DNA from: Bigelowiella natans CCMP2755
Taxonomy: Eukaryota > Protista > Cercozoa
Length of the DNA: 64,000 nucleotides
Direction: 5' to 3'
Assembly (NCBI GenBank): GCA_000320545.1
Contig: ADNK01001887.1
Span: 1-64,000 of the forward strand
Positions 45,870 through 62,115 of the stretch are shown piece after piece; position 1 is the stretch's first letter, and the number at the start of each line of letters is the position of its first letter. The position numbers and the translations under genes were made by a program. The notes under the pieces were generated by a model that made no database searches, was not told where the DNA came from, and was given only the letters and a program-made list of their open reading frames with translations.

Positions 45870-47509
45870 ATGGCATTCACGACGGTAGCATTGGCTTTGG
45901 CCATCCTCCTTCGGCCGAGCGTTCCGGCTTGGTTCTACGCAAGCTTTTTGCTCCTGCCCTTCCTACTTGGAACACACAATGACAACCTATTGTCGAAGGG
46001 GACGAGGTCAATTTTGGCGGTGGTGGCGATGCTCACCATGGCAGGGTATGCTGCGGTAATTGTTTCGACGGAAGTGGATGTGTTCGAAGCCACGCCTTGG
46101 TGGCTAAGAGCCATCATGGAGGACACAGGTATTAATACAGAGAAGTGTCAGTGAAGGATCCTGAACTCCCCTGCTCCAATCTTCATCATATCCAATTATG
46201 CTCACCATTGCACACATCATTCTCACTCTTTCCCCATTGTTTCACTTTGACAACTCTCAGAAGGTAAAGCAAGTCGGAGGATATCTCGTTGGAATTTGTC
46301 AGTGCTAACACTGCCTGAGTGTTTCATTCTTCTGGGGATGGCATGCGACATTTGTGCTCAAAGGTGACATAAATGCAGCTCCACATTTGCCATCCGCTCA
46401 GCCTCCGAAAAGAGACCATCTAACTCCCCGTGGTTATTCTCTCTCAGGGCGTGGTGCATTAGATCCCCATTCGGCAATAGATGCACCATAGCTTCCGCTT
46501 TGTGGCCTGTGTCGGTCATAGACCAGTTTTCCCAAGGATTGCAACTCCTCCTGCTCCTAGTCCTACAACTCGTATTCCCGTCCCCGTTTGGCATTCCTCA
46601 TTGGGGCACATGCATCACAATGCTGTGGAAATGTGCTGTGATTGCAGTAGGATGGGACGTTCCACGACATCAACAACTACACAGAGGGGGCGATCGTTCT
46701 ATCTCATTAGCTGCATGGGAACGAATGCTCGGCAATTGGTTCGCGTACGTGCATATCATGGCCCTACAGGTTTTGTCGTCACAGATTCAGTCAGAGCCTC
46801 AGGACTTTCAACTCACTAAATATGATGTTGTTACATTGTTACCCAGGTGTTGTGCGCCCAACGTAGCGTCTTTGCGAAGTTCCCCGTCCTGCACTGGGTC
46901 TTCGGATTTGATGACGATTTTGTCGCCGCAGCTCAGATTCAGACTCTGCTTCTGACAGTCTTTGTGATGTGCTCCTCCTCCACCTCGTCGAAGCAAACAA
47001 CACCAGCCCCCAGCCGTCGCTACACGCGCCTGAGCTCCACGATTTTGACGACGCATCAGTTGAATTCAATGGAAATACCATTGCTTTCTCCGTTGTTGTC
47101 TTCGTCACAATCATTGATAATGCCACAACAGATACGAACCACGAGCTCGGAACTACTTGTCGCATCGGCAGGGTTCATTCTCGCACTAACTCTGCCTTCC
47201 GTCATTGGTGTTGCCCTCGCTGCTGCGTCCTTGCTCCTTGCTGGCTGCTCAGCTTCGAGGATTCACCCAAGATATCAGTCCATATATCACCCTGAGAAGA
47301 ATCAGGGACGACAGCAGCAGCAGCAGCAGCAGCAGCATCGTCGCCGCCAAAGTAAAAGCAAGGATCAGGACATGGAAAGAGACGGTGATGATGATAATGA
47401 TGATGATCATGATCATGATGCCAAAGAGGAAGTGTTGGTGGTGATGCCTAAGAAGCAGAACGAGAAGAAGGAGAAGAAGAACGGGAAGGAATTCGATGAT
47501 AGTAGATCA

Positions 47510-47540
<31 letters not shown>

Positions 47541-48223
47541 AGTACGGAGCTTTGGAGCGAGAGGTGCGGTTATCAGGGACGGCGAAATATAATGATATCA
47601 TTTGCCTCAAATCGCGGAGGAGGAAACAGGAAAATGACCAGCAGTCGCAACTCTTCTTCCCTTTACGGCGCCTCAGTAATTATACACGTCGTATCCGCCT
47701 CGTCGTCGTGGGGCTAGCAATGCTACTGCTGATGGCACACTCTGTCTTATCTGCGTTCTTTGTCGTTGCCCCTTCGGCAGCCATTTCGATCAAGACTCCA
47801 TACGGCCTAAGGGCGATCTCAGGAAGCATATCCAGGGACTTTTGGTATATATCTTGCACACAGATCGTGCTTCTCATGGTCGCCCTCCGTCCCCCCCCCC
47901 TCTATTACTTGACGTACGGCCCTTTCTCCCGGAAGATTACCGCTCGATTTGTCCATTTCACTGCAGCTGCACTCACGGTAGTAGTACGCTATCATTCTGA
48001 GAATCAAATGAATGGGGGGGAGGAAACAGCATTGTCACAGAAAGAGAAATGGGGGGAGAGTAGTAATAACAAGCAGTCGAATCATAGCGTAGCTATCCTC
48101 TAGATTATGCTGATCTTGCCTAAATTGCAAGAAGACAAGCACTTACATTTGTTGCTGGTGCTGTTGTACTGAAACTGCAGTAATCATGAAAGCTGCTCGG
48201 TTAATTGACTGTTAGCAGTCATG

Positions 48224-48269
<46 letters not shown>

Positions 48270-48486
48270 ACAACTTGCTCTATCGTTCATATCAGCTTAT
48301 GTGGAGTTCTTGCCATCCTGGAACCTTTGGGCCTTGCCTCATAACCATATTCATACTCGCCCGGATTGCTTCTACAGAGAAGAACGGGGCGATGTTTTGG
48401 CTGCTTTCTGCGGCCACCACAAGCCTAGTCTTGCTATACACACAGTAGGGATATGTGAGGGGTGGTGGTGGCAGTGATTGTTTCTG

Positions 48487-48520
<34 letters not shown>

Positions 48521-49581
48521 TGTGTGTGATTGTGTGTGTGTGTGTATGTGTGTGATAATTGTCGTCATCGCCATCGTCGTTCTGTGTTTGCTGAGAAGAG
48601 AGAAGGAATCGACATAATTCAATAGCACCCATCTTAATAATACTTAATGCTGTGACATATTTCTCTCCAATGGCAGATACGTCTGGGTCGTGCTGTCAAG
48701 GACGATGGGGTTATTTGACTGGACACCCGGCATCATAACAACGCTAGGCATTGATTTACTGCTACGGATTCCGAGCAGAATTCAGCCTCTCGAATCGTTC
48801 CTGCAGTACCCCGTAGCACTCTTAGAGCTAGGTTATCACCGCAACATATCATCCTCACTGTTCCACTGAACCGAAGTATTATTTCACATTAATCTAGAGT
48901 CCACTCAATTTTCTCAAACAGTTTCCCCCACTTTATCACTCTTTTTCATATTTTCCCTCTCTGATGATGCGGCTGCTGGGATTGATTGCCCTCGTTTCCT
49001 TTGTTCTGTAGCACCGCCCAAATTTGAGTGAGAGGTGTAATATTGCAAATTTGCAGCAGCAGCAGGGTGACTCGTATCAATAAAATTTTGACACGCCACC
49101 ATCCCATCCATCAGGTACGTGCATCATTCTGTGCTTGGGGTGTCAGCTACGGTGCTGCGATGATGATGATGATGATGATGATGGCCCAACCAGCAGTATC
49201 GATGCCATAATAACAAAGAGGAGCGGTCGCCATAACAGCAACGAGAAGGCAACTGCACGTCTAGGGACGAGCCTAGACAACAAACACTCAAGAGACTTAC
49301 CATACTACTATTCTCGGGATGGTGACGATAATGATGCAGGCGGGGTAGAGCGTCCTGACCAGAGGCGAAAGCCAATCGCCCGCGGTCTCTTCGCACGTTT
49401 ATGGGGGTAAGAGGCATGGAAAACAAGAGGAGGAGGAGGAGGAAGAAGAAGAAGAAGAAGAAGAACAAATTTATGGCTAGTGATATGATGATGATGATGA
49501 TCATGATGATGACACACCAAAATAGAAGACAACCACCACGAATGATTATCGACGTCATCAATATAATGGCATTTTATGTAC

Positions 49582-49613
<32 letters not shown>

Positions 49614-50091
49614 CGTATCCGTTGGAAGATATTTGTGTCAAAGTAAAAGCAGCAGCATCTCCGACAAAGGAATTCGTCAAAAGCTGTGCGTGGTGATGAG
49701 CATGGTGCTTTCAAAAGGACCCATTTCGCACACGGCAAAGATGTGGTGCGAGGCAATGGCATGGTAATGAAAAAGGGTTAGCACGACGATGATGATAATG
49801 AAGAGGAGGGGAGGAGGCGGAGAAGGAGGAGAGTGCTGCTGCTGCTACTCCTCTTTGCGAAGAATGTGTTGCTCCGATCTAGACATATACGCACGTTTTG
49901 CCACCGTTATCATGAATAGTATCCAGAAATGGGTCGGAAGATAGTCTCAATGCAATACCAATGATTTTTGGGATACCTCGCCATGTGTGTTCCAACTGAT
50001 AACAAAAGGGAGGGGAGGAAATGAATTCAAAGCAGAAAAACACAACAAAACATTGGGTTTGAAAGGGGGGAACAAATATATGTGATTGCGG

Positions 50092-50126
<35 letters not shown>

Positions 50127-53100
50127 TCACTACTACTTCTACTAATACTAGTGCTACTACGATTGCTGGTGATCAGGTTCTTCATCGTATGCTTCCACCT
50201 GTCATGTACGGCTGGACCTGTCCTGTCTTTGGGCTGTCAGCTGCTGCTCTACTATCCTGCTATCTTATTCCGCCGCAAACCACACAATACTACTACTACT
50301 ACTACTTCTACTGCTGCTGCTGCTGCTGCTGCTGCTCGTGCCACCTCCTCTTCACCATCGGAAGTCACAGTCGACACCTTTGCCATGGCATGGGGCTCTG
50401 TTGCTGCGGTTGTGTGGGGTTTCCGAGTCGCAATACGCCATTGCCTGGGAAATGAGGTAGTTATAGTAGTAGCAGTATATTCAAGTATGCGAAGAACAAG
50501 ATGATGATGATGACGATGATGATGGTGGTGGTGACAATGATGATGATACTGGTTTGTCACCTGCTATTATTATTCTCCAGCCGAGCTTGAAGCTGAGCAC
50601 TCCCACGTTGGGTACCAGTGGGCGGCTAGTGGAGGACGTCAAAGACGTGGCGCTCTTGTACGTCCTCGTCCGAATGATACGGCGCCTTGCCGAGCCCCCG
50701 CCGAAGGCCTCAACCTTCCCACCAATCTTGAGTCATCATCATCGCCCTCATCGTGTGAGGGGGAAGAGTAGTAAATGGGACATCTTGATGAATGAGCAGT
50801 CCAATGATGATGGGAACAATGAAATCTATGCTAGCGGGGGGGGAGGAGGAGGAAGCGCTGGTATTTCCAGGGACGCAAGCCAAGTCTCGATGATGGTCAG
50901 TTAGTTGTATAGTATAGTAAAGCAAGTAGATATAGAGCAAGAAGCAGCAGCAGCGATTGCAGCTAAGGATGCTGCTACTGCTGCTGGTGCTACTACATTA
51001 ATTGCAGAAGGCTGTCAATGTACATGCTGACATATACTACAACAAAACATGTGTAACCCCCCTCCCCACTGATGAATGACCTTTCAGGCGGCGATCGGCA
51101 GCTCTCAACTCAAGTACAAGAAATCACCGGAGTCGCCGCGTAGATTGATTCTTGATGATGGCTACTCGGATGCGCCTACTGCCGTTGCTGGTAAGGATGC
51201 GAATAATGGGGTGAGAAGAAGGAGGAGAAGAAGAAGAGGAAGAGATAATGATGATGGGCATGAGCAGCGAGATCAAGGCGCTGGCAGAGGCACAAACGCT
51301 GGTAATACTACCACTACTAGTAGTACCTCGGATGAGGTCAATCCCTTGGTTTTTGCTGCTGCTGTGGACGATTCAACCCGTATAGACACCCCTCCAGTCA
51401 CCCCTCCGAGGAGATTCCTGCGCAATAACAACGACGACAATGGCAACGCTAGTCATCATCCTCAAAACCGCCGAGTAGTCGGTAAAACAATCAGCTTTGA
51501 TTTCGATGAAAAAGAAGAAGATGATAATGATGAAGCGGGTGGTGAGATGAGGGGAGGCAATGTGGCAAAATCGATGGGAGGCACTACTACCAACAAGACG
51601 ACAACGGGAGATACAACAGCGGCAGCCACATGGCTATACTCTCTCTTCTCCCCGTCTGAACGAGCGGTTCTCTCCTCGATCTTCACCGCCGCAAATGTGC
51701 TGATATTCTGGGCCCTGGCACTGTGTTTGGTCGTCGCGGCTTGTGACGGGGAGGCATCAGTGCTCCGTGCAGGTTACGTGGGGCTGCTGGGGGGGCTGTT
51801 GGCTTTCCAAAACAGCCAGCACTACTACTACATCGTCGTTCTGGTGACCGTATTCTTCGTCGCGACCGATATATCTCTAACCTTTGCACTCGGCATGCTT
51901 GAGTCAGGAGTGCCCGGGTGGTTCATCACCGCTACTGCTGCCGCCGCTGCTGCAGAGCCATCTCCCGTATTATCCCCGTCATCCTACTATTATTACTATT
52001 ACACGGGAGGAGGACGACGAGGGGGAGAAGAACACCAGCAGCTCTTCTTTGGAGTGTCGGCCATGATGTGGGTCTACGTCCTCAGTATCCTCAAGCTGCA
52101 GCTAGCACATTGGCATTGCCAGGCGAAGAAGGCAGCAGCAGCAGCAGCAGCAGCAGCAGCTGCCACAATGGTGGAACCACCTAAAGAGCAGCAACAACAT
52201 CGACAAAAACAGCCGAACGACCGAAAGCCAACAGAATCGATGCTTCCCCTCCCCTCAAGTAGTAGGAGTAGTACGCGGTACTTGTCTCTACGGTGGATCC
52301 GTGAAAGGGCTTGGCAGGGCGACTTTGTGGAGCTTGCATGCTTGACGATAATGACAACCGTATTTCTCAGAGAGCGATCCAGCTTGCTGTCCTTCCTCGA
52401 CCTTGCAGCGGCCTCAATGCCCCTCTACATGCCGACTCCTTGGATAAGAAAGGCCTGGCCCTGGTGCACGCTCTACTGCGTTTTGGGCGCCGTCCTGCAC
52501 TCGATTCTCAACTCTGTCGAGCTGGTCCTCGCAATCCAAGGAGGGGGGGGGGGGGCACAACAAGTGCCCTCCAATCCCAATAGTAGTAGTAGTAGTAGTA
52601 GTAGCAGTCCAACAGTGTTGATGCTGCTGCCGAGGTGGGTGAGCACGGTGTTCGGCACACAAGCGCCAGGTCTTTGGGAGATACTCGCTATTACGATCTT
52701 CTGCCTGCAGCAATGCGCATTTTGGTCAAAGCCACACGATGCTGCTGCTGATGATGATGCTGATGCTGCCGATGATGATGCTGGCCATCACGGCGAACAG
52801 CAGCAGCAGCAGCAGTTCCGTAGACGCACGTCCTCAACAACACCATCTGTGCTTCACGGTGCCAGCACTTTTAGCGGTTATAATAATAACCGCCCTGCTC
52901 CATCACCAGCTGCAGCAGCAGCAGCGGCCACGGTAGTAGCATATCCATCATCATCATCATTCGAGGAAAAGAAAGGCCGGGCCACGCCTCCACCACCGTC
53001 GTCATTCCCTCCAGTGAATAGCAGCAGCTTTCATCACCAGCAGCCCATACATCGCTTCTATCGAAGCAATACGCCTCCTCCCGTCATTGGTGGTGGTGGT

Positions 53101-56100
53101 GGTGGTAGCATGAGGGGGGAGCAAGACTCCAAGGAGGGAGGCACGAAAATACCTACTACATATAATTTATCCACGCTTAAAAAGACCCATCATCATCATC
53201 AGCAGCAGCAGCAGCATCTTACTCCCCTCCAGAAACAGCATCGCTACTACCGCACAATACAGACAAGGCTGCTCATCCTCAAGGCCTTTTTGGTCCTCAC
53301 CGCTCTCTTTGCATTCGCTATTGGAGCTCTAAGGCTGGGCGGGGGGACGGGATTTGAGGCTTCTACGACATCATCGCCTACTACTACGACTTCAACTACG
53401 AGCAGCGGCAGCAGCAGCAGTAACTCTGGAGGTGTCTTAGCAGGATTGTACGTCGTTGCTTGCGTGAGCCTCATGGGCCAGCTACAAGGGTGAGAGAGGG
53501 AGGGAAGGGAGGAGGGTGGCGGAGAAACGGGAGGGGGGAGAACAAACAGAAGAGAATAATTAGAAAAGGACAGATTACCAATGGTTAGCGCTTTGAAATT
53601 GTTATTTGTTCTCATTTCATTTCCTCTGTTATCTGCTGTTGAAATGATGTTTCTACCGATCGCTCGCATCGCTACTATTTCCATCATTGCCTACACCACC
53701 ACCACACCGTCACCTTCATCGTCATTCGGTGTTGTGCTGGCGTTGTGTTACTTTGCTAATCATCATCCATCACCCACCACCACCACCACCACCGCCAGAT
53801 TGTTTTCAAAGCGGCGGCAGTGGAAATGGAGATTAGTCGGCCTACTGAATGGCTGCTCGTTGCTGGTGTCCCTTGCGATGCGTTTCTCATTGCTCGAGGC
53901 GTGCTTCGGTAAGCTGGAATGGCTCGGAGCGAAAGCATGCCAGCAATCCGTGATTCTCGACATCCTTCTGTTTGGCCTCCTCGGGCTCAGACGCCGTCTA
54001 TTCGAAAGGGGGTTTGGCGTGCAGCTGGGGCGGTACTGGCAGCTCATGAAAATGCAATCCCTCGGTAGTAGTCGTAGTAGTAGTAGTAGTAGTAGTAGTA
54101 GTCGTAGTAGTAGTAGTAGTAGTAGCAAAGCAGCACTTGATGCCTGTTGATTATGGCAATCATGTTTATTTCCGTTAACTCTACGATTGGGTTTGGTTTT
54201 CTCCGGGGGGCAGTTATGATGATCCAATAAGCAGGCACCCCACCTTCCCCACTACCACCACCACCACCACCACTAGCTTCACCTAAATATCATTATCTTT
54301 ACCTTGCGTCGCCGACGATCAAACATAAATCAGCGCGGGAGCATGCCAACCGTGAGCGCAGAAAGTGGCTCGAGAAGGTGACGCAGATAGAGGTCACGAT
54401 TGCGTACTTCAAGAGGCAGCTCAGGTATTATGAGAGATGGAAGCAACGGTCCGCGCCCAATTTAAGCAAAGGCGTGAGTTTGGTTCTTGACGAATGCGGC
54501 ATCGACCTCGATTTAAAGGTGGTGATAATAAAACTTGCGCATGGGAGAGTGTATTTCTGTGCCCGTAATTAGTGAATGTGTGGGGGGGAGGGGGGGGGGT
54601 TTGCGGGGTTTGGAGATGGATATGGGTGATGGCCAGATCTCCAAGAAAAATGAATAATTCACACAATTTGCTAATTTTCATTGTTGATGCTGCTGCATTG
54701 TTGGTTCTGATCTGCTCTACTCCTCCCACATCCCTCCATCCCCCCCATCATCGCCCTTCCTTCCTTTCCTCCCTCCCTGTGAAAAGCATGCGACAATGGA
54801 TTCTATTGCGGGGGTTGTGCGTTCGTTAGAAGCCAAGCGTGCTGCAATGGAAGATGATCCTGCGGCCGCACCACTAGCAGGGAATCATCATCATCATCAT
54901 CATCAAAACCACAATAACTACCACCAGAACAAGATTAAGCGCTACAAGTCCGCTCCCGACGTGGCGGGGAGAGGGGGGGAGATGCGAGGAGGAGGAAATG
55001 AAGACATACGAGGAGACCCTTTCCAGCAGCAACACAGCCATCATCATAACCAACGCCATCATTACAATCATGGCAAAATGATGCAGAAGCCGCACCAGCA
55101 GCAGCAAGAGCAGCAGCAGCAGCAGCAGCAGCAATTGACCGAGATATCTCTGGTTGCGACCTGTATTGTAAGTGGAGGGCGATTCGAGAAGAAAAAAAGG
55201 AAGAGCCTATTGAAGCAAGGTAATAGTGCTGGTGGCAAGGACCAACAAATCAGGCGCAGTATCAGTGGGGAAGGCGTAAGATTCAGGCAAAATGCTACAG
55301 GAGGAGGAGGAGGTGGGGCAGGTTGTTGATAATAAGTAGTCCGAAGTAGTGATTACCTAAATGACATTTGTCTTTCGTCAAGTTAACATGATTATCACCA
55401 TATGCCGTGATGGGATGGTGGTGGTGGTGGTGGTGGTGGGTGGTAGTGCTAAAAAAAGGGGGGGGACAAACCTCCGGTTCACTGCTCTTCCTCCTCCTCC
55501 TCTTCTCCCTTTTTTCTTTCTTTCTTTCTTTCATATATAAGCAGCAACTCCATCATCCCTCTCGTCCTCCTCCTCAGCTGTCTGGAACATGCCTGGTCAA
55601 GGAGCGGCGGAACAAGTGGAGGGGGGCGATAAAAAGAGGAAGCAGCAGCCATACTATCAGCACAAGCAGCAGCAACAGAGCCAGCGACAGCACTTCCTAG
55701 ACGTGTTTCACAGCGCGTACGTGCAGGTGCGACAGGGCCGACACACTCTCGCCACGTCGCCAGCCCCGGGTATTATCTTGAGTAAATCTGGTGGGAAGAT
55801 ATCGTGGGAAAAGCTGCATTTGACGATGGAGCTCATGTCGCCAGTAGAACCGGTTGATATTCGGTGGTTCATACCCAAATCATCCCTTGCAGCTACTACT
55901 ACTGCTGCTGCTGCCGGTGGCGCTGCATTTCCCTCCTCCACTTCCCCCTCCTCCCAGTTGTTGTCCCCCCCCTCTCCTCTCCTTCCAGATGTCACGGTGG
56001 GGTCGTGCAGTGTGAGTGTTGCCGATCTGCTAGCTGGGGATACAGCCAAGCACATTGTAAGAAGAAATTATTTACTGATGATTCACTGATTGATTGTAGC

Positions 56101-56781
56101 AGTAGAGTAATAGAGCTCCACAATCACTGTTTCCCATTGCCTCCTCATGCATATATTCTTGCTTAACCATAGACACTTAAGTCTGAATCATCCGATTGGA
56201 ACGGACATGGGGAGTCATCGTCGCTTCTGAAATCTGTGAAGGTGCTCATCCAGGAGGGCACGAGTGTCCTCGTACAAACACAGAAGAAGAAGAAGAAGAA
56301 AAGGAAGAGGACAGGTCGAGGCAACCGCGCTGCGACGATTGGAGTGATGCCAAGTAGTGGCAAGCTCAATAACAACATCGACAGCAACGTCAACGGCGCA
56401 AACGGTATTAACGGTGGCGGGGGAAATAAAGGCAACAACAGCAGCAACAAGAACAACAACAACAACAATGGGAACACCAAGTATAAGCGAACCGCCACTC
56501 AAACCGTCCAAGAACGCATTGTAAGTGCAGCCCCCCGTAGTTATTATTCGTGAATATAGTAGTAGTTCTTTCTCCTTTATTTCAATAATATATGTATATC
56601 TGGGGGTGATCTTCTCTTCCTCCTCCTCCTGCTCCTTCTCTTTTCCCTAACACCATCACCACTATCTTAGTAGACGAATAGTTTCTTCTCTTTCTCACTT
56701 AGGCCTGCCAATCACCTTTCTTCTCCCCCCCCCCTCCATGCTGCTTCTGCGAATGCTTTCCGCCGTTTTCTCCTCCTCCTT

Positions 56782-56827
<46 letters not shown>

Positions 56828-57569
56828 TTCTCTTTCTCTTCCTCTCAGTGGCAAGGGGTGTTCTACCGTGGCGGATCGGTGAACGAAACAGCAGATGGCA
56901 AACATGTCAATAGCAGTTTAGCACCAGTGGCACCATCAGCATCGAAGGACGTGCGCTATACACGTGCCCGGTCATTTCCACGGAGTGTCAAATCTCCTTA
57001 CTACTATGAACCCGGTGAAGATCCCATTCTGACCCATCTGCAGCAGCAGCAACAACAGCAGCAGCAGCAGAGTAAAGAGCAATGGTGGAAAGCTGCCCTG
57101 AAGGAGGCCAACAAGTGGGTCACGTGGGGGATTGAAACGGTAGTATGCTACCCATTGCTACCACGAAGAACAGTGTTGATGAGCACAGAAGCAGCAGCAA
57201 CCGAGTTGTAGTAGGGTAGTAGTAGCTAGTAGTAGTAGTTCCTTTCCTCCTCCAATATCTTACACATGAACGAACGTGTGGTGAATATGATCAGATAATA
57301 GCGACTGTCTGGTTATACTCCGATTATCACGATCTGGCGCAAAAGCCAGGCACGCAGCTGCGACGGTTTGGGCGTGCATTCGGATCATGGGTGTTATCGA
57401 ACACAGACGTGCTGTGCTATGCCACCTTCATTGCCGATCACGTCGCTGCCTACAACTTGATGTCGGTTGTGTTTCCATTGTCCATGTTCCTCGTTGCCAT
57501 TCCCTCTCCCACTTCGCGCCGATACTGGAAGTTTATGGCGACGTATTGCTCTGCCATCATCATGTTTAA

Positions 57570-57608
<39 letters not shown>

Positions 57609-57915
57609 TTTATGGATCTGTGCTTCTCTCTGGCATGCAAATAGTTAAATGACATTGCTGCATTCCGAGATGAGTGTGATGTTATCGTCATATGACCGCC
57701 CCTCTATGTACGTAGTAGCTTTTGATCACATCTGCTACCTTTTCATTGCATCCTCATCATCATCATCATTATCATCATGCTTTGGCTGATCGGACCAACC
57801 TCTGATTTTCTCATCAAACAACAATGATGTTGATAAAGACTTTCCTGAGGCTGCCGTTCATCGGCGATAACATCGTTGGACATGGCATCATCACGGTAGG
57901 AGTAGTAGTAGCAGC

Positions 57916-57949
<34 letters not shown>

Positions 57950-58573
57950 TTATCAAGCACCAAATGCAATCGCCGATAATAACAAGAATGATGCATGCAG
58001 AAGGGATGTATCTGAATAATCTTCTTCTTCTTCTTCTTTTTCTATTTCTTCTTCATCTTCGCCTTCATCGTGACCAGGTCATCTACTACCCCCGTGAATA
58101 CCCATGGGTGTCTGTGCAGCATCACCATCGCCATCACAACCACCACCATCAATATGAGCTGCGCGACGATATCCGGCCGATGCTCGAGTGGGACCTTGCT
58201 TTCGATCTCCTTGTGCTTCTTGCACTGTCGGCACATCGGCAGGTCATGATGCTGAAGGGCGTGTGGGACATCCATGATCATCTCACCAGTGCCAAAGCAG
58301 CAGCAGCTGCAGCTGCTGCTGCTGCTGCAGCTGGCGATCACAAGAAAAGACGGAGTAGTAACTCTGTGCTAGCTGCTATTGCAAAGAAGAAGAAGGGCAA
58401 GAATAAGGAGGTACACCAGCAGCTGCAGTTGTTTTACGAATCCGTCGAGCGCATGTCTTCGGAAGGGACAATGCCAGCAGCAGCGGGAGAAGGAGCAACA
58501 GGTATGCTGCTTCATCGATCTATGCGAAGCACCAGTACCAACAATAGGAGGAGAACGACGATGAGGATGAGAA

Positions 58574-58614
<41 letters not shown>

Positions 58615-59903
58615 CGTTACCATCCCCTTTCTTTCCCTCCTTCCTCAGAGCGACAACAGCAACCAGCAGAACAGCCACCGCTGCCTTCTCCTCCTTCTCC
58701 TCGACGTCATGCTCCTTCCGAGCCCCTTCTTCTCCCCCCCCACTCTCGCCAGCAAATGTCAGCAGCAGAGAGTCGGAAATTGGGCGGATCTCTGTATCAT
58801 CACCACAACCAACAACAACAACAACAACATCTTGGAGGCATCGTCTCGTCGCATGGAAGAGGAGCACTGGCATCAGCATCAGGAGAAAATAATAATAACA
58901 ACAATAATGATAATAGGCAAAATGAAGAGAGCAAGAAAAACGCATTTCTTGGTGGTGGTGGTGGTGGTGGTGGTAGCCGTGATGATAGAAAGCTTGCTGA
59001 TGCTGATGCTGATGCTGCTGCTGTGCTTGGTATTTCGAGAAGTGAGGAGAAGAGACCTCGTCTCCACGATATGCTCCAGCAGCAGCAGCAACAACAACAA
59101 CAACCGTGGCACCAGCCACAGCCGTCGTCATCATCATTCGGCTATCATCATCATCATCATCATCATCATCCTCATCCTCATCAACATCATCATTACAACG
59201 GTAACAACAACCGTCTCCTCGGCAACGACGTCGTGATTATTGACGAAGAGGTAGGCGGCCATGATCGTGGTGGAGATAACAACGACGACAACGACACCCT
59301 CTCTGCTTATGAGTACTTTATCGAGGAAGAGGAGGATGATGGCTTCGGCGGTGGCGGCAATGGCCAAAATCTGCTCTTCATGGAGGGAGACGAGGAGGGG
59401 AACGATTACTACCACGATGACAACAACACACGGAAACGCACACTCACAAGTTTAGTCAATCACTTCAAGCAGCATTATCTCCGGGTACAACGAAAGCGGC
59501 CACTAACGTCGAAGGACCTCTACGGCTGGATCTTCTGGACGGAAGTGATAGCATTCATCATGATCGTGACTTTCTTCCCTCGATTCTCTGGCAACTACGG
59601 GGACTCGCTCCAGGAGACGTTTGCCTCAAACAGAGTGCCTCTAGCCTTTTTCTTCGCAATGTTCACGCAGTTTCTACTCATCGTCATCGACCGTGTAAGT
59701 AGCAGTGGGTAGACGTACAGAGTAGTAGTAGGAAGGAAGGGGGGTGGGGGGGGGAGGAGAAGAACAGCTGCCTCTCATCGCAGACAGACCGACACAGCGA
59801 GAAGGGAGAAGGGAGGGGGGGGGGGGGGGTTACGAGTACAACAGGAGATCAGCAAATAGAGGAATGTGCGTTCGTCATCGTTTTCACCATTTAGAAATCC
59901 CTG

Positions 59904-59939
<36 letters not shown>

Positions 59940-61714
59940 ATTAGGTGCTTTACCTCACAAACTCTCGTACGTGGAAGGGCCGGTTGCAGGTTCTCGGCGT
60001 AATATCGGTGCATGCGACGGTGTTTCTGCTTCCCCTCTTCAACACACCGCCGCTCGGATCCAACCCAGGGCTGATGAACTCCGATGTGACGTACCGTGTT
60101 TACTCGATCTTTTACATCGTGAAGGCCATCTACCTCTTCGCTTCTGCCCACCAGGTCAGAGCAGGGTACCCGCCCTTTGCGAAGGAGGACGGAACCTTCA
60201 CCATCCCCTCTCTTACTGGCTTGGTCCTCTTCAGCATTTACCGTGCCATTCCATTCTTGTTCGAGGCGAAGACTATTCTGGATTGGACGTGCACAGGCTC
60301 CCCGCTCTTCTTTGGAGACTGGCTCAAGCTGCACGACATCCACTGCAACCTCTACATGGTGGAGTGCGACCTTGAGTACCGAAAGTCGCTCAAGCGAAAG
60401 AAAGGCGATATCTACCCGACAAGGATCAAGGTGGTAGTCGGCTTCTTCGCAGTGTTTGGCCTGGTTCTGATTGTGTGGCTGCCATTCATGATCTATCTCA
60501 CCGGGGTGCCTCTTTTCGTAAACCCGCTTCAATCGGTGACGCTCACGGTGAAGATCGAAGGGCAGCATAATTCCTGGAGGCTGTGCGAGCACTCCGATGT
60601 GATAGGCATTCATGAGGTGCCGGCAGGGCTCTCCCTCGACGTGCTACGCGATCACCCGTACAATCTACCCAACAACCTGGTGCAGGAGACTGTGCAGCAC
60701 GTCAGACTCAACGGCGATTCGACATACGCGTGGACTATCACGCCGCCTTCCTTAGAGAAGCTCATCGAGACTGTGGAGAACGACGACACGTGCCGTCTGG
60801 TCATGGCCTTTCGGTTCGAGATGGAATCAGGCTCCGTGTCGCGAGTGCGATATGAAGCCGACCTCAACAAGAAACTTCTCCTCAAAGCCCTCAACGCATC
60901 GCACGTGCACGACTACTATCGAGAAGAGCACGGCGAGGAAGGAGGGAGGGGGAGGAACAGAAAGATGGGATGGGCGGACGGCGAGGACCTCTCTGTAACT
61001 GTGGACAATGCGTATCCCCTCTACACGCACATCCTTGCAGCAGGGGAGGCAAGGGCAGCAGGGCCAAAGGTAAACCTGAAGCTCACTCGAATGTCGTCGC
61101 AGGGGGTTGAATGGTGGGCGATAAGGTCCACTTCGCTTGGTAAGCAGGACGAGACAACGGCAAATGGAGGAGGAGGAGGAGGAGGAGAGAAGACGACGCC
61201 GAAGGGAAGAAAACTGCCGCCTCCCCCACCACCAAGAGCAACAAAAGTACGCCGGCGGCGTAGAAAGGTTATGGGAATGTCCTCCTCTTTCCACGGTACT
61301 GATGATGGAGGCGATTGCCGCTCTCCCAAATTCTGCGATGACGAGCTGCTAGTAGAGGAGGAACACCTGGCTCAGCAGCAGGAGCCCGACGAAGACCACG
61401 GCGACGACAACGCTGCAAGTAATGAGGATGATGGAAACTACGACGAGAACGAGGAGGAAGAAGAAGAATATGATGATGATGAAGAAGAAGAATATAGGAA
61501 AGAAAATGACTGGAACAACCCATGGAGGGGGATATTCAGTGGAAACTCCCTGGTTTTCTTCACATTGTCGGACCAAATGCTTCTGGGAAAGCTCATTGAC
61601 TCCTCCATTTACGAGTATGTGCATGTCTGCGATGCGTGCGTATTTGTCATCGTGCTAGACAATTGGCAATAATTTGCTAATGTCAATACATAAAACGTTT
61701 ACAACAGTAAATGT

Positions 61715-61758
<44 letters not shown>

Positions 61759-62115
61759 TTTTCAAGTATACTCTTATTCTCGACATTCCTAAATGACTAC
61801 GATATTAGGTATGGAATGTTCGCACTCTATGTGACGTTCGTGTTCTCGCTTGGGAGATTTCTTCGAGTATACGTCGTTGGGATGAGCCATCGCATCATCT
61901 ATGAAGACTGGGGAGACGTTGAGTTCGTAAAAGAGCTTCTCAACGACATCTATGCAGCCCGTTGGGATAACGAATATGAGTTGGAGGAGGAGATGTACGG
62001 AGAGCTTATACAGCTGTATCGCTCTCCCGAGAAGCTCCAAGAGGTTACGCGCCCTCCGAAGAAGCTAATCGGCATTATGAACTGGCCATCCACCGCCAAG
62101 ACAAAAACAGACTAG
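45870..62115 (+). CDS. PIEZO: Piezo-family mechanosensitive ion channel
   Basis: Many TM units. Beam-like ILDILLFGLLGLRRRLF..REHANRERRKWLEKVTQIE, THU9-like SNTDVLCY..VFPLSMFLVAIPSPTSRRYW, QFLLIVIDRVLYL, the PFxxEx6W motif RAIPFLFEAKTILDW (60251-60286), and inner helix/CTD YGMFALYVTFVFSLGRFLR..ELEEEMYGELIQLYRSPE. Confidence 0.96.
55135..56271 (+). other. C2-like domain inserted in the Piezo cytoplasmic region
   Basis: Strand pattern ISLVATCIVSG / SAYVQVRQG / HTLATSP / GGKISWEKLHLTMEL / VDIRWF / DVTVGSCSVSVADLL / KHITLK / VKVLIQ runs across phase-compatible exons. Confidence 0.65.

What the first reader, a model, noticed from the sequence alone, without database searches (positions are those of the whole stretch)
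55135..56330. Piezo channel with a C2-like domain inserted directly after the beam
Seen: between the beam-like helix (about 53950-54460) and the last blade unit (about 57390 onward), in-phase exons (introns 55322-55577 and about 56057-56172) encode eight predicted strands in C2 order. These include SAYVQVRQG, xxT, GGKISWEKL (cf. NPxWNE), VDIRWF and DVTVGSCSVSVADLL (cf. DDxIGxxxIxLxxL). Most Ca-ligating aspartates appear absent, and polybasic tracts (KKKRKSLLK, KKKKKRKR) lie within and after the domain. Established: animal and plant Piezos have a largely disordered loop here, and C2 domains bind anionic lipids. I know of no C2-containing Piezo. Inference: a novel architecture that couples the force-transmitting beam to a lipid-binding tether, giving phosphoinositide-dependent gating or sensing at membrane contact sites.
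Basis: partly seen in the sequence, partly recalled or inferred. Interest (0 to 1): 0.8.

Follow-up and report, generated by a model that had tools for sequence, protein, structure and literature searches.

The report
Piezo channel carrying a C2-like domain
One of the Piezo mechanosensitive channel genes of the alga Bigelowiella natans has a strongly basic, C2-type beta-sandwich (a fold that usually binds membranes) built into the flexible inner loop after its beam, an architecture not seen in the 80 other Piezos checked and not tested experimentally.

Summary
Window 46.3-62.1 kb (+) is a real Piezo gene of Bigelowiella natans (Pfam THU8, THU9-anchor and cap hits; JGI model Bigna1/40795 covers only a fragment). 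The exons at 54787-55321, 55578-56056 and 56173-56520 join in phase through GT..AG introns.

An intron-less transcript contig of a related organism (L001) is collinear with the whole gene. It carries the same insert in frame between conserved flanks.

No sequence method recognises a C2 domain (Pfam, PDB phmmer and profile, hhalign E 0.14). The fold evidence does:
- AlphaFold2 of the ortholog's insert gives an eight-strand sandwich with core pLDDT 70-83.
- In an exhaustive scan of 48,161 PDB chains, essentially all of the 50 best matches are C2 domains (Z 9.5-6.2).
- Language-model features of both orthologs point to C2 clusters.

No candidate Ca-ligand aspartate is shared by the two orthologs. 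Both are strongly basic, with a polybasic run directly after the last strand.

The domain sits in the latch-to-clasp linker, where mouse PIEZO1 has the tethered "wedge". It is absent from one B. natans paralog (C3532) and from a 40%-identical relative. None of 80 other Piezo loops has a Pfam C2, but three carry a PH domain there.

Lipid binding and any gating role are inferred. Verdict: a new variant of a known kind, of moderate to high interest.

The parts
46308..62106 (+). Whole Piezo gene (many exons), Bigelowiella natans
   Evidence: tblastn of ortholog transcript L001 (ORF1 + P0151) is collinear from 46308 to 62106. Pfam Piezo hits. Organism from EukProt/JGI name of P0001.
54334..54518 (+). 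Beam helix plus conserved latch-like segment (REHANRERRKWLEK...VSLVLDECGIDLDLK)
   Evidence: 97% identical to L001. The cDNA confirms junctions QSL|AREHAN and DLDLK|HATMDS.
54787..55321 (+). Exon A: conserved helix HATMDSIAGVVRSLEA, His/Gln-rich linker, strand 1 of the C2-like domain (55135-55170), polybasic KKKRKSLLK (55189-55215), start of the long basic loop
   Evidence: Strand 1 is equivalent to L001 model residues 9-22.
55322..55577 (+). Intron (GT..AG) inside the loop between strands 1 and 2
   Evidence: Frame-1 ORF stops at 55327. A pyrimidine tract plus CAG ends at 55577. Phase 1 is restored by the first two bases of exon B.
55578..56056 (+). Exon B: rest of the basic/Gln-rich loop, strands 2-6 (about 55718-56014), with an Ala/Ser/Thr/Pro-rich expansion (about 55880-55985) in the loop before strand 6
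   Evidence: BLASTP to ortholog insert E 6e-7. AF2 strands have pLDDT 73-83. Atlas features point to C2. Foldseek top hits are C2 but not significant.
56057..56172 (+). Intron (GTAAGA..TAG)
   Evidence: An alternative acceptor at 56181 would also keep the frame.
56173..56520 (+). Exon C: last strands of the domain (about 56173-56283), polybasic KKKKKKRKR (56284-56310), Asn/Gly-rich linker, conserved YKRTATQTVQERI
   Evidence: The K6 sits at the same place in the ortholog and is the only K/R run of 5 or more in its 2708 residues.
56849..57139 (+). Exon D: conserved pre-THU8 cytosolic segment (WQGVFYRGG...KWVTWGIET), in the position of the clasp
   Evidence: cDNA junction TQTVQERI|WQGV.
57295..57570 (+). 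Start of THU8
   Evidence: Pfam THU_Piezo1 E 1.7e-7. 77% identical to L001.
59383..62106 (+). THU9, anchor, outer helix, cap, inner helix
   Evidence: Pfam Piezo_THU9_anchor E 7.9e-44 and Piezo_cap E 2.4e-28.

Best explanation
One of at least three Piezo paralogs of Bigelowiella natans carries a globular module in the long cytosolic linker between the beam/latch and THU8.

The module has an eight-strand C2-fold beta-sandwich core of about 120-130 residues. In B. natans it is spread over three exons and inflated by low-complexity loops.

It lacks a conserved Ca-binding aspartate set and is strongly cationic. One polybasic tract follows strand 1 and a K6-9 tract follows the last strand.

The most likely function is Ca-independent electrostatic binding to anionic inner-leaflet lipids (PS or phosphoinositides). 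Flexible tethers of about 60-110 residues on each side would hold it beneath the blade and pore module, where it could tune gating, inactivation or localisation.

Shown here: Piezo identity, exon logic, presence in an ortholog's transcript, predicted C2 fold, charge pattern, lineage restriction.

Inferred: lipid binding and any effect on gating.
For: Gene identity and exon structure:
- Piezo identity.
- Organism.
- Exon phases.
- Ortholog transcript L001 has one 1965-residue ORF running beam, insert, THU8.

Conservation:
- Insert core is 22-28% identical between orthologs, with strand positions kept and linkers unalignable.

Fold:
- AF2 of the ortholog insert: 94 residues at pLDDT 70-90, eight to nine strands.
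- Foldseek: almost only C2 domains, best E 6.3e-4.
- VIA-align second look: Z 9.5-7.7 over 109-128 aligned residues.
- Foldseek-independent scan of 48,161 chains: essentially all of the top 50 are C2-type, Z 9.5 down to 6.2 at rank 50.
- ESM Atlas by shape: NT-C2, C2, Aida_C2, PTEN_C2, C2_PACS_N.
- Language-model features: C2 clusters for window exon B (0.92) and for the ortholog core (0.93, 25 of 30 hits).

Charge:
- Net charge +21 (window pieces) and +14 (ortholog).
- The K6 after the last strand is the only K/R run of 5 or more in the ortholog.

Precedent at this site:
- Mouse PIEZO1 has a tethered 'wedge' module in this linker that docks near a phosphoinositide and regulator site and controls inactivation (PMC13518315).
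- Three environmental Piezos carry a Pfam PH domain in the same loop.
Against: - No sequence method supports C2. Pfam gives nothing at E<=10 on the exons or on the ortholog insert.
- PDB phmmer and profile searches find nothing.
- hhalign against seven canonical C2 domains of the same genome aligns only 16 columns, E 0.14.
- The AF2 models rest on a two-row alignment, with mean pLDDT 57-59.
- The atlas recognition values (1920 and 2195) are below the tool's 2300 mark, so that evidence is weak on its own.
- The window's own domain was folded only as exon B, without its first and last strands, and its Foldseek hits are not significant (E 0.07-1).
- No B. natans transcript was found.
- Only two sequences carry the insert, so selection on it cannot be measured.
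- Basic low-complexity tracts are common in this genome.
Confidence: 0.6

Rival explanations
1. The sandwich is real but works as a protein-docking module, not a lipid binder. It could be a state-dependent particle that docks on the channel's own cytosolic face, like the mammalian wedge. It could also be a binding site for a cytoskeletal or regulatory partner, as in Aida, CEP120, Munc13 C2A or RPGRIP1-type C2 domains.
For: Many of the best structural matches are C2 domains used for protein contacts or with mixed roles: Aida, CEP120, anillin, RasGAP, Munc13-1 C2A. The wedge precedent lies in the same linker (PMC13518315). The lysine-rich groove of PIP2-binding C2 domains is not conserved between the two orthologs.
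Against: Both orthologs are strongly cationic, and the polybasic tract after the last strand is conserved. That fits a membrane surface better than a specific protein site. A different lipid-binding fold (PH) occupies the same loop in other Piezos.
Confidence: 0.2
2. There is no stable domain. The stretch is a fast-evolving, low-complexity disordered linker with some beta propensity, and the C2 call is an over-reading by AlphaFold2 and the language model.
For: All sequence and profile tests are negative. The MSA is shallow and mean pLDDT is 57-59. The atlas tool warns that shuffled sequences sometimes give consistent families. The insert is only 22-28% identical between orthologs whose beam is 97% identical.
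Against: The N-terminal blades of the same two proteins are also only about 30% identical, so the divergence is not exceptional. Strand positions and hydrophobic alternation are kept while the flanking linkers do not align at all. Essentially all of the 50 best matches among 48,161 chains are one fold, and rank 50 still has Z 6.2, against the tool's typical 4-5 for models without a match. Two diverged sequences give the same answer independently.
Confidence: 0.14
3. It is a Ca-sensing C2 placed beneath the pore. It would bind membrane when Ca enters through the channel, giving Ca-dependent feedback on gating.
For: A C2 fold sits next to a Ca-permeable pore. One aspartate lies at a candidate ligand position in each ortholog: VLDKK in L001 and PDVTVG in the window.
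Against: The retained aspartates are at different positions in the two orthologs. The loop that should hold the first two ligands is replaced by a basic low-complexity insertion of 80-110 residues. The strongest structural matches include many Ca-independent C2 types: PTEN, PI3K, SHIP2, RasGAP, Aida, anillin.
Confidence: 0.04
4. The three exons are not all part of the mature B. natans Piezo mRNA. They could be skipped, alternatively spliced or mis-joined.
For: No B. natans transcript or gene model covering the insert was found. The JGI model is a 228-residue fragment.
Against: The open frames, canonical splice sites and phases all agree. The ortholog's transcript carries the homologous segment in frame between the same conserved flanks.
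Confidence: 0.02

Closest known systems
Piezo1/Piezo2 family (animal and plant Piezos)
   Same: Same blade repeats, beam, THU8, THU9-anchor, cap and pore helices (THU repeats recovered by local jackhmmer). The insert lies in the THU7-to-THU8 cytosolic region that holds the beam, plug/latch, linker and clasp in human PIEZO1 (PMC12308237).
   Different: In human PIEZO1 the latch-to-clasp stretch (1426-1514) is unstructured apart from the short helical wedge. Here it holds a C2-fold sandwich with long low-complexity tethers. The loop from beam end to THU8 is about 560-600 residues. For comparison, the whole THU7-to-THU8 gap has a median of 294 residues in 84 representative Piezos.
Mouse PIEZO1 wedge domain (A1437-L1468; PMC13518315)
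   Same: A small globular module tethered by flexible linkers between beam and clasp. It is placed to reach the anchor/outer-helix region where lipids and regulators bind.
   Different: The wedge is 32 residues and two alpha-helices. The Bigelowiella module is an all-beta sandwich with a core of about 120-130 residues. There is no sequence or fold relation, and a wedge-like function was not tested.
Ca-independent C2 domains (PTEN C2, PI3K C2, SHIP2 C2, p120RasGAP C2, PKC eta/epsilon C2, Aida C2, NT-C2)
   Same: Predicted eight-strand sandwich superposes at Z 8-9.5, rmsd 3.2-4.8 A over 111-128 residues. No conserved Ca-ligand set. Basic surface elements.
   Different: No detectable sequence or profile similarity to any Pfam C2-clan family. 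A giant basic insertion lies between strands 1 and 2. The host is an ion channel loop, not a soluble signalling enzyme.
PH-domain-bearing Piezos (P0095, P0070, P0074; environmental eukaryote transcripts)
   Same: A membrane-targeting type of module inserted in the same THU7-to-THU8 loop of a Piezo (Pfam PH E 8.6e-11, 8.7e-7 and 2.7e-9, all above the cut-off).
   Different: Different fold (PH versus C2) and a different Piezo clade, so an independent insertion. These are recognisable by Pfam, the Bigelowiella insert is not.

Membership tests
Piezo channel | THU repeats, THU9-anchor, cap (C-terminal extracellular domain) and pore helices | tested here: met
   PF23188 E 1.7e-7, PF24874 E 7.9e-44, PF12166 E 2.4e-28 on window exons. 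1028 library hits at E<=0.001 to the C-terminal exon, the best 150 of which were listed.
Piezo channel | The insert is part of the same reading frame and mRNA as the channel | tested here: inconclusive
   Met in the ortholog transcript L001, which has a single 1965-residue ORF. In B. natans it is supported only by splice-site and phase logic. No transcript was found.
C2 superfamily (fold level) | Eight-strand antiparallel beta-sandwich superposable on solved C2 domains | tested here: met
   Ortholog insert model: core pLDDT 70-83. Essentially all of the top 50 among 48,161 PDB chains are C2, Z 9.5-6.2. Atlas shapes are NT-C2, C2, Aida_C2 and PTEN_C2. For the window's own sequence only exon B (strands 2-6) could be folded: the strands are predicted, but Foldseek E is 0.07-1.
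Pfam C2 (PF00168) and other C2-clan families | Match to the family HMM at or near the gathering score | tested here: not met
   No Pfam family at E<=10 for exon B, exon C or the ortholog insert. PF00168 finds 18 other places in this genome. hhalign against seven of them gives E 0.14 over 16 columns.
Ca-dependent C2 (synaptotagmin/PKC-alpha type) | Five conserved aspartates in the two top loops (after strand 1 and before strand 6 in this domain's own strand numbering) | tested here: not met
   By alignment of the two orthologs, the first loop is a basic low-complexity insert with no DPY-type motif. The second loop reads LDKKSS in L001 and IPKSS...PDV in the window. No aspartate is shared.
Lipid-binding C2 | Binding to anionic phospholipid membranes | not testable with these tools
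   Only indirect evidence: net charge +21 and +14, and a conserved polybasic tail.
PIEZO1 wedge | Two short alpha-helices that dock on the anchor-outer helix linker | tested here: not met
   The module here is all-beta. No Piezo chain appears among the listed structural matches. Only the position in the linker is shared (PMC13518315).

The most novel reading that the evidence does not exclude
The beam-to-clasp linker of Piezo is a hot spot where different eukaryote lineages have plugged in membrane-reading modules: helical wedge in animals, PH in one protist clade, C2-like in Bigelowiella. In the Bigelowiella channel the cationic C2-like domain would make mechanical gating or inactivation depend directly on inner-leaflet anionic lipid. 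It would be a self-contained lipid-gated Piezo, usable to dissect how inner-leaflet lipids control Piezo.
Probability: 0.3. Interest if true: 0.7.

Novelty: new variant of a known kind. Interest (0 to 1): 0.58.

Why it matters
How inner-leaflet lipids and the unresolved cytosolic linkers control Piezo gating is an open question in the animal field. A 2026 study showed that a tethered module in this very linker (the wedge) sets inactivation.

A natural Piezo with a much larger membrane-binding-type fold at the same site, plus an independent PH-bearing clade, would be an evolutionary experiment pointing at that linker as a regulatory socket. It would supply constructs (with and without the module, or swapped between channels) to test lipid coupling directly.

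It also shows that the B. natans gene catalogue badly under-annotates this roughly 16 kb gene.

Tried and rejected
Searches that led nowhere:
- Pfam on each exon and on the ortholog insert at E<=10: no C2 or any other credible family.
- phmmer and a two-row profile against PDB sequences: nothing.
- Word-index protein search with the ortholog insert as a region of the 1965-residue ORF, with the insert alone, and with window exon B: no hit at E<=1. This leaves no gene model of B. natans covering the insert and no other carrier.
- Two metagenome scans, one with the 97%-conserved beam and one with THU8: nothing, then a single 1 kb TARA contig with no upstream sequence.
- Own-genome search with exon B: only a spurious match with three stops. 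No source copy of the domain is detectable.
- Own-genome search with the ortholog insert: only Ser-rich low-complexity hits.
- HMMs of the insert against all fetched Piezos: nothing significant.

Readings considered and rejected:
- A hidden intron in the Ala/Ser/Pro-rich loop of exon B (acceptor-like tract ending at 55987). No upstream GT keeps the frame, by hand reading of the sequence.
- L001 as the ortholog of a different paralog. The other B. natans Piezo loci are only about 25% identical to it.

Step left out: the three B. natans exons were never joined into one sequence for a search or a fold. The ortholog's contiguous transcript stood in for it.
Full report
**What is in the window**

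The + strand from about 46.3 to 62.1 kb is one large, intron-rich Piezo gene. Pfam recognises three parts on single exons:
- THU_Piezo1 at 57226-57645 (E 1.7e-7).
- Piezo_THU9_anchor at 59945-61669 (E 7.9e-44).
- Piezo_cap at 61711-62112 (E 2.4e-28).

A full-library HMMER search with the C-terminal exon found 1028 proteins at E<=0.001. The best hit, P0001, is 99% identical and 228 residues long. Its sources name it EP00466_Bigelowiella_natans_P005665, jgi/Bigna1/40795. So the organism is the chlorarachniophyte Bigelowiella natans, and the public gene model covers only a fragment of this gene.

**Exon structure**

By direct reading the exon structure around the finding is:

| Exon | Coordinates | Content |
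|---|---|---|
| Beam | 54334-54518 | Beam helix and latch-like segment |
| A | 54787-55321 | Ends in phase 1 |
| B | 55578-56056 | Its first two bases complete the split codon |
| C | 56173-56520 | Last strands, polybasic tail, linker |
| D | 56849-57139 | Pre-THU8 cytosolic segment |
| E | 57295 onward | THU8 |

Each intron has GT..AG ends. Each open frame closes a few codons past its donor, so splicing is required.

**An ortholog's transcript**

P0151 belongs to the same 90% cluster as P0001. It led to L001, an 8619-base JGI transcript contig with no introns. Its 1965-residue ORF plus P0151 are collinear with the window from 46308 to 62106. Identity is about 30% in the N-terminal blades, 97% in the beam and 78% in the pore module.

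L001 confirms four junctions: QSL|AREHAN, DLDLK|HATMDS, TQTVQERI|WQGV and GIET|IIA. That moves the beam-exon donor to 54519.

The window's exon B aligns to it at 22-28% identity (BLASTP E 6e-7), with the strand-like segments in register and the linkers unalignable.

The other B. natans Piezo loci are only about 25% identical to L001. L001 is therefore the ortholog of this gene.

They were handled exon by exon, and the ortholog's contiguous transcript served by reference.

**Is it a C2 domain?**

Sequence methods say nothing:
- Pfam at E<=10 is blank for exons B and C and for the ortholog insert.
- PDB phmmer and a profile search are blank.
- The same genome has at least 18 Pfam-detectable C2 domains. 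hhalign of the insert against seven of them aligns only PDVTVGSCSVSVADLL with YDDFMGTCSLTRTAIL, at E 0.14.

Fold-level evidence is consistent:
- AlphaFold2 of the ortholog insert used a two-row alignment. It gives strands at model residues 9-22, 102-107, 110-114, 120-136, 144-150, 163-170, 179-186 and 196-205, with core pLDDT 70-83. Residues 24-87 are disordered.
- Foldseek returns almost only C2 domains, best PKC eta at E 6.3e-4.
- VIA-align gives Z 9.5 for p120RasGAP C2, 9.0 for BON1, 8.8 for PTEN and Aida, and 8.7 for anillin. It aligns 109-128 residues across the list, at rmsd 3.2-4.8 A for the compact matches.
- The Foldseek-independent scan of 48,161 representative chains puts C2-type domains in essentially all of the first 50 places. 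Z is still 6.2 at rank 50.
- The ESM Atlas shape search gives NT-C2, C2, Aida_C2, PTEN_C2 and C2_PACS_N.
- Language-model features point to C2 clusters for the window's exon B (0.92; 21 of 30 hits) and for the ortholog core (0.93; 25 of 30). Recognition values are below the tool's comfort mark.
- The window's exon B folded alone, lacking the first and last strands, shows the expected strands at pLDDT 73-83. Its top Foldseek hits are C2 but not significant.

I conclude that a C2-fold sandwich is likely, at about 0.8. Family membership by sequence is not shown.

**Anatomy**

Strand 1 (LTEISLVATCIV, 55135-55170) is followed by a basic low-complexity loop. That loop is about 110 residues in B. natans and about 80 in the ortholog. 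It starts with KKKRKSLLK and contains the A/B intron.

Strands 2-6 lie in exon B. B. natans has a 35-residue Ala/Ser/Thr/Pro expansion before strand 6. The last strands lie in exon C and are followed at once by KKKKKKRKR.

In the ortholog, the K6 at the same place is the only K/R run of five or more in 2708 residues. Net charge is +21 for the window pieces and +14 for the ortholog. No aspartate at a candidate Ca-ligand position is shared by the two sequences.

**Position in the channel**

The human PIEZO1 map (PMC12308237) reads:

| Element | Residues |
|---|---|
| Beam | 1305-1367 |
| Plugs and latch | 1368-1425 |
| Unstructured latch-to-clasp stretch | 1426-1514 |
| Clasp | 1515-1570 |
| THU8 | from 1657 |

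So the insert lies in the equivalent of the latch-to-clasp linker. In mouse PIEZO1 this linker contains the 32-residue helical wedge, tethered by 73- and 22-residue linkers. The wedge docks between clasp, anchor and outer helix in the flat state and controls inactivation. That region also binds phosphoinositides and regulatory proteins (PMC13518315).

'Largely disordered loop in animals' is fair.

**Distribution**

- The insert is absent from the B. natans paralog on contig C3532. Its loop is about 230 charged, low-complexity residues.
- It is absent from a relative that is 40% identical in the pore module (L006).
- I cut the THU7-to-THU8 loops out of 80 representative Piezos. The median gap, measured over 84 representatives before four short gaps were dropped, is 294 residues.
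- None of the 80 loops has a Pfam C2.
- Three related environmental sequences have a Pfam PH domain there, above the gathering score: P0095, P0070 and P0074.
- HMMs of the insert find nothing in any fetched Piezo.
- Word-index searches and two metagenome scans found no further carrier.
- Full-text searches found no paper on a C2-bearing Piezo or on a Bigelowiella Piezo.

**Mechanism**

Shown: a cationic C2-fold module on long flexible tethers, anchored at both ends to parts of the channel that sit just under the inner leaflet.

Inferred: it binds anionic lipid electrostatically and without Ca. This would bias the blade or pore module, or concentrate the channel in PS- or PIP-rich membrane. I put this at about 0.4 taken alone. 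The overall best explanation (C2 fold, part of the channel, probably membrane-directed) is at 0.6.

Rivals:
- A protein-docking particle in the manner of the wedge: 0.2.
- No stable fold: 0.14.
- A Ca sensor: 0.04.
- Exons not in the mRNA: 0.02.

**Verdict**

This is a real and apparently undescribed Piezo architecture, restricted so far to one paralog lineage in Bigelowiella and a relative. Support is consistent but purely computational. It is a new variant of a known kind. Interest is moderate to high for Piezo specialists, helped by the parallel PH-bearing clade and the wedge precedent at the same site.

Noticed in passing
P0095 residues about 1412-1528; P0070:891-1175; P0074:1292-1588 (proteins): A clade of environmental eukaryote Piezos (Logan and JGI transcript contigs, no taxon name) carries a Pfam PH domain in the same THU7-to-THU8 loop. 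E-values are 8.6e-11, 8.7e-7 and 2.7e-9, all above the cut-off. I found no paper on this.
   Followed up: partly
window 46308-62106 (+): The public JGI model for this locus (Bigna1/40795, 228 residues) is a small fragment of a Piezo gene of about 16 kb with many exons. No model covering the insert is in the protein collection.
   Followed up: partly
G000:C3532:6762-8604 (L018), G000:C1358:4875-6080 (L019), G000:C1587:744-824: B. natans has at least two further, very divergent Piezo loci, about 25% identical to this gene's ortholog. The C3532 copy has a plain charged linker and no sandwich between beam and THU8.
   Followed up: partly
L018:3736-5847, C-terminal part of that ORF: After THU8 the C3532 paralog has a stretch (..GSGVFAVGSNVMIMFDNQWLPATIHGL..) that looks by eye like a small beta module of the Tudor/Agenet kind. 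This is a recollection only and was not tested.
   Followed up: no
window 54474-54518: The conserved segment VSLVLDECGIDLDLK belongs to the beam exon (donor GT at 54519), as the ortholog transcript shows. A GTGAGT at 54474 is a decoy donor.
   Followed up: yes
L001:6018-6027: The ortholog contig has a run of 10 N between its two ORFs. This explains why the gene caller split the Piezo into products of 1965 and 743 residues.
   Followed up: yes
window 54040-54130, 55400-55440, 56780-56830, 57570-57600 and many coding loops: Trinucleotide and dinucleotide microsatellites (AGT, GGT, CT, CAG) fill introns and are also read in frame as His, Gln, Asn or Ala/Ser runs inside cytosolic loops, including two loops of the C2-like domain.
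   Followed up: no
L006:87-2801 (Logan SRR32456843 contig): A Piezo transcript 40% identical in the pore module, from an unnamed organism, has a beam-to-THU8 linker of about 230 residues with no strand pattern. It serves as an outgroup lacking the insert.
   Followed up: partly
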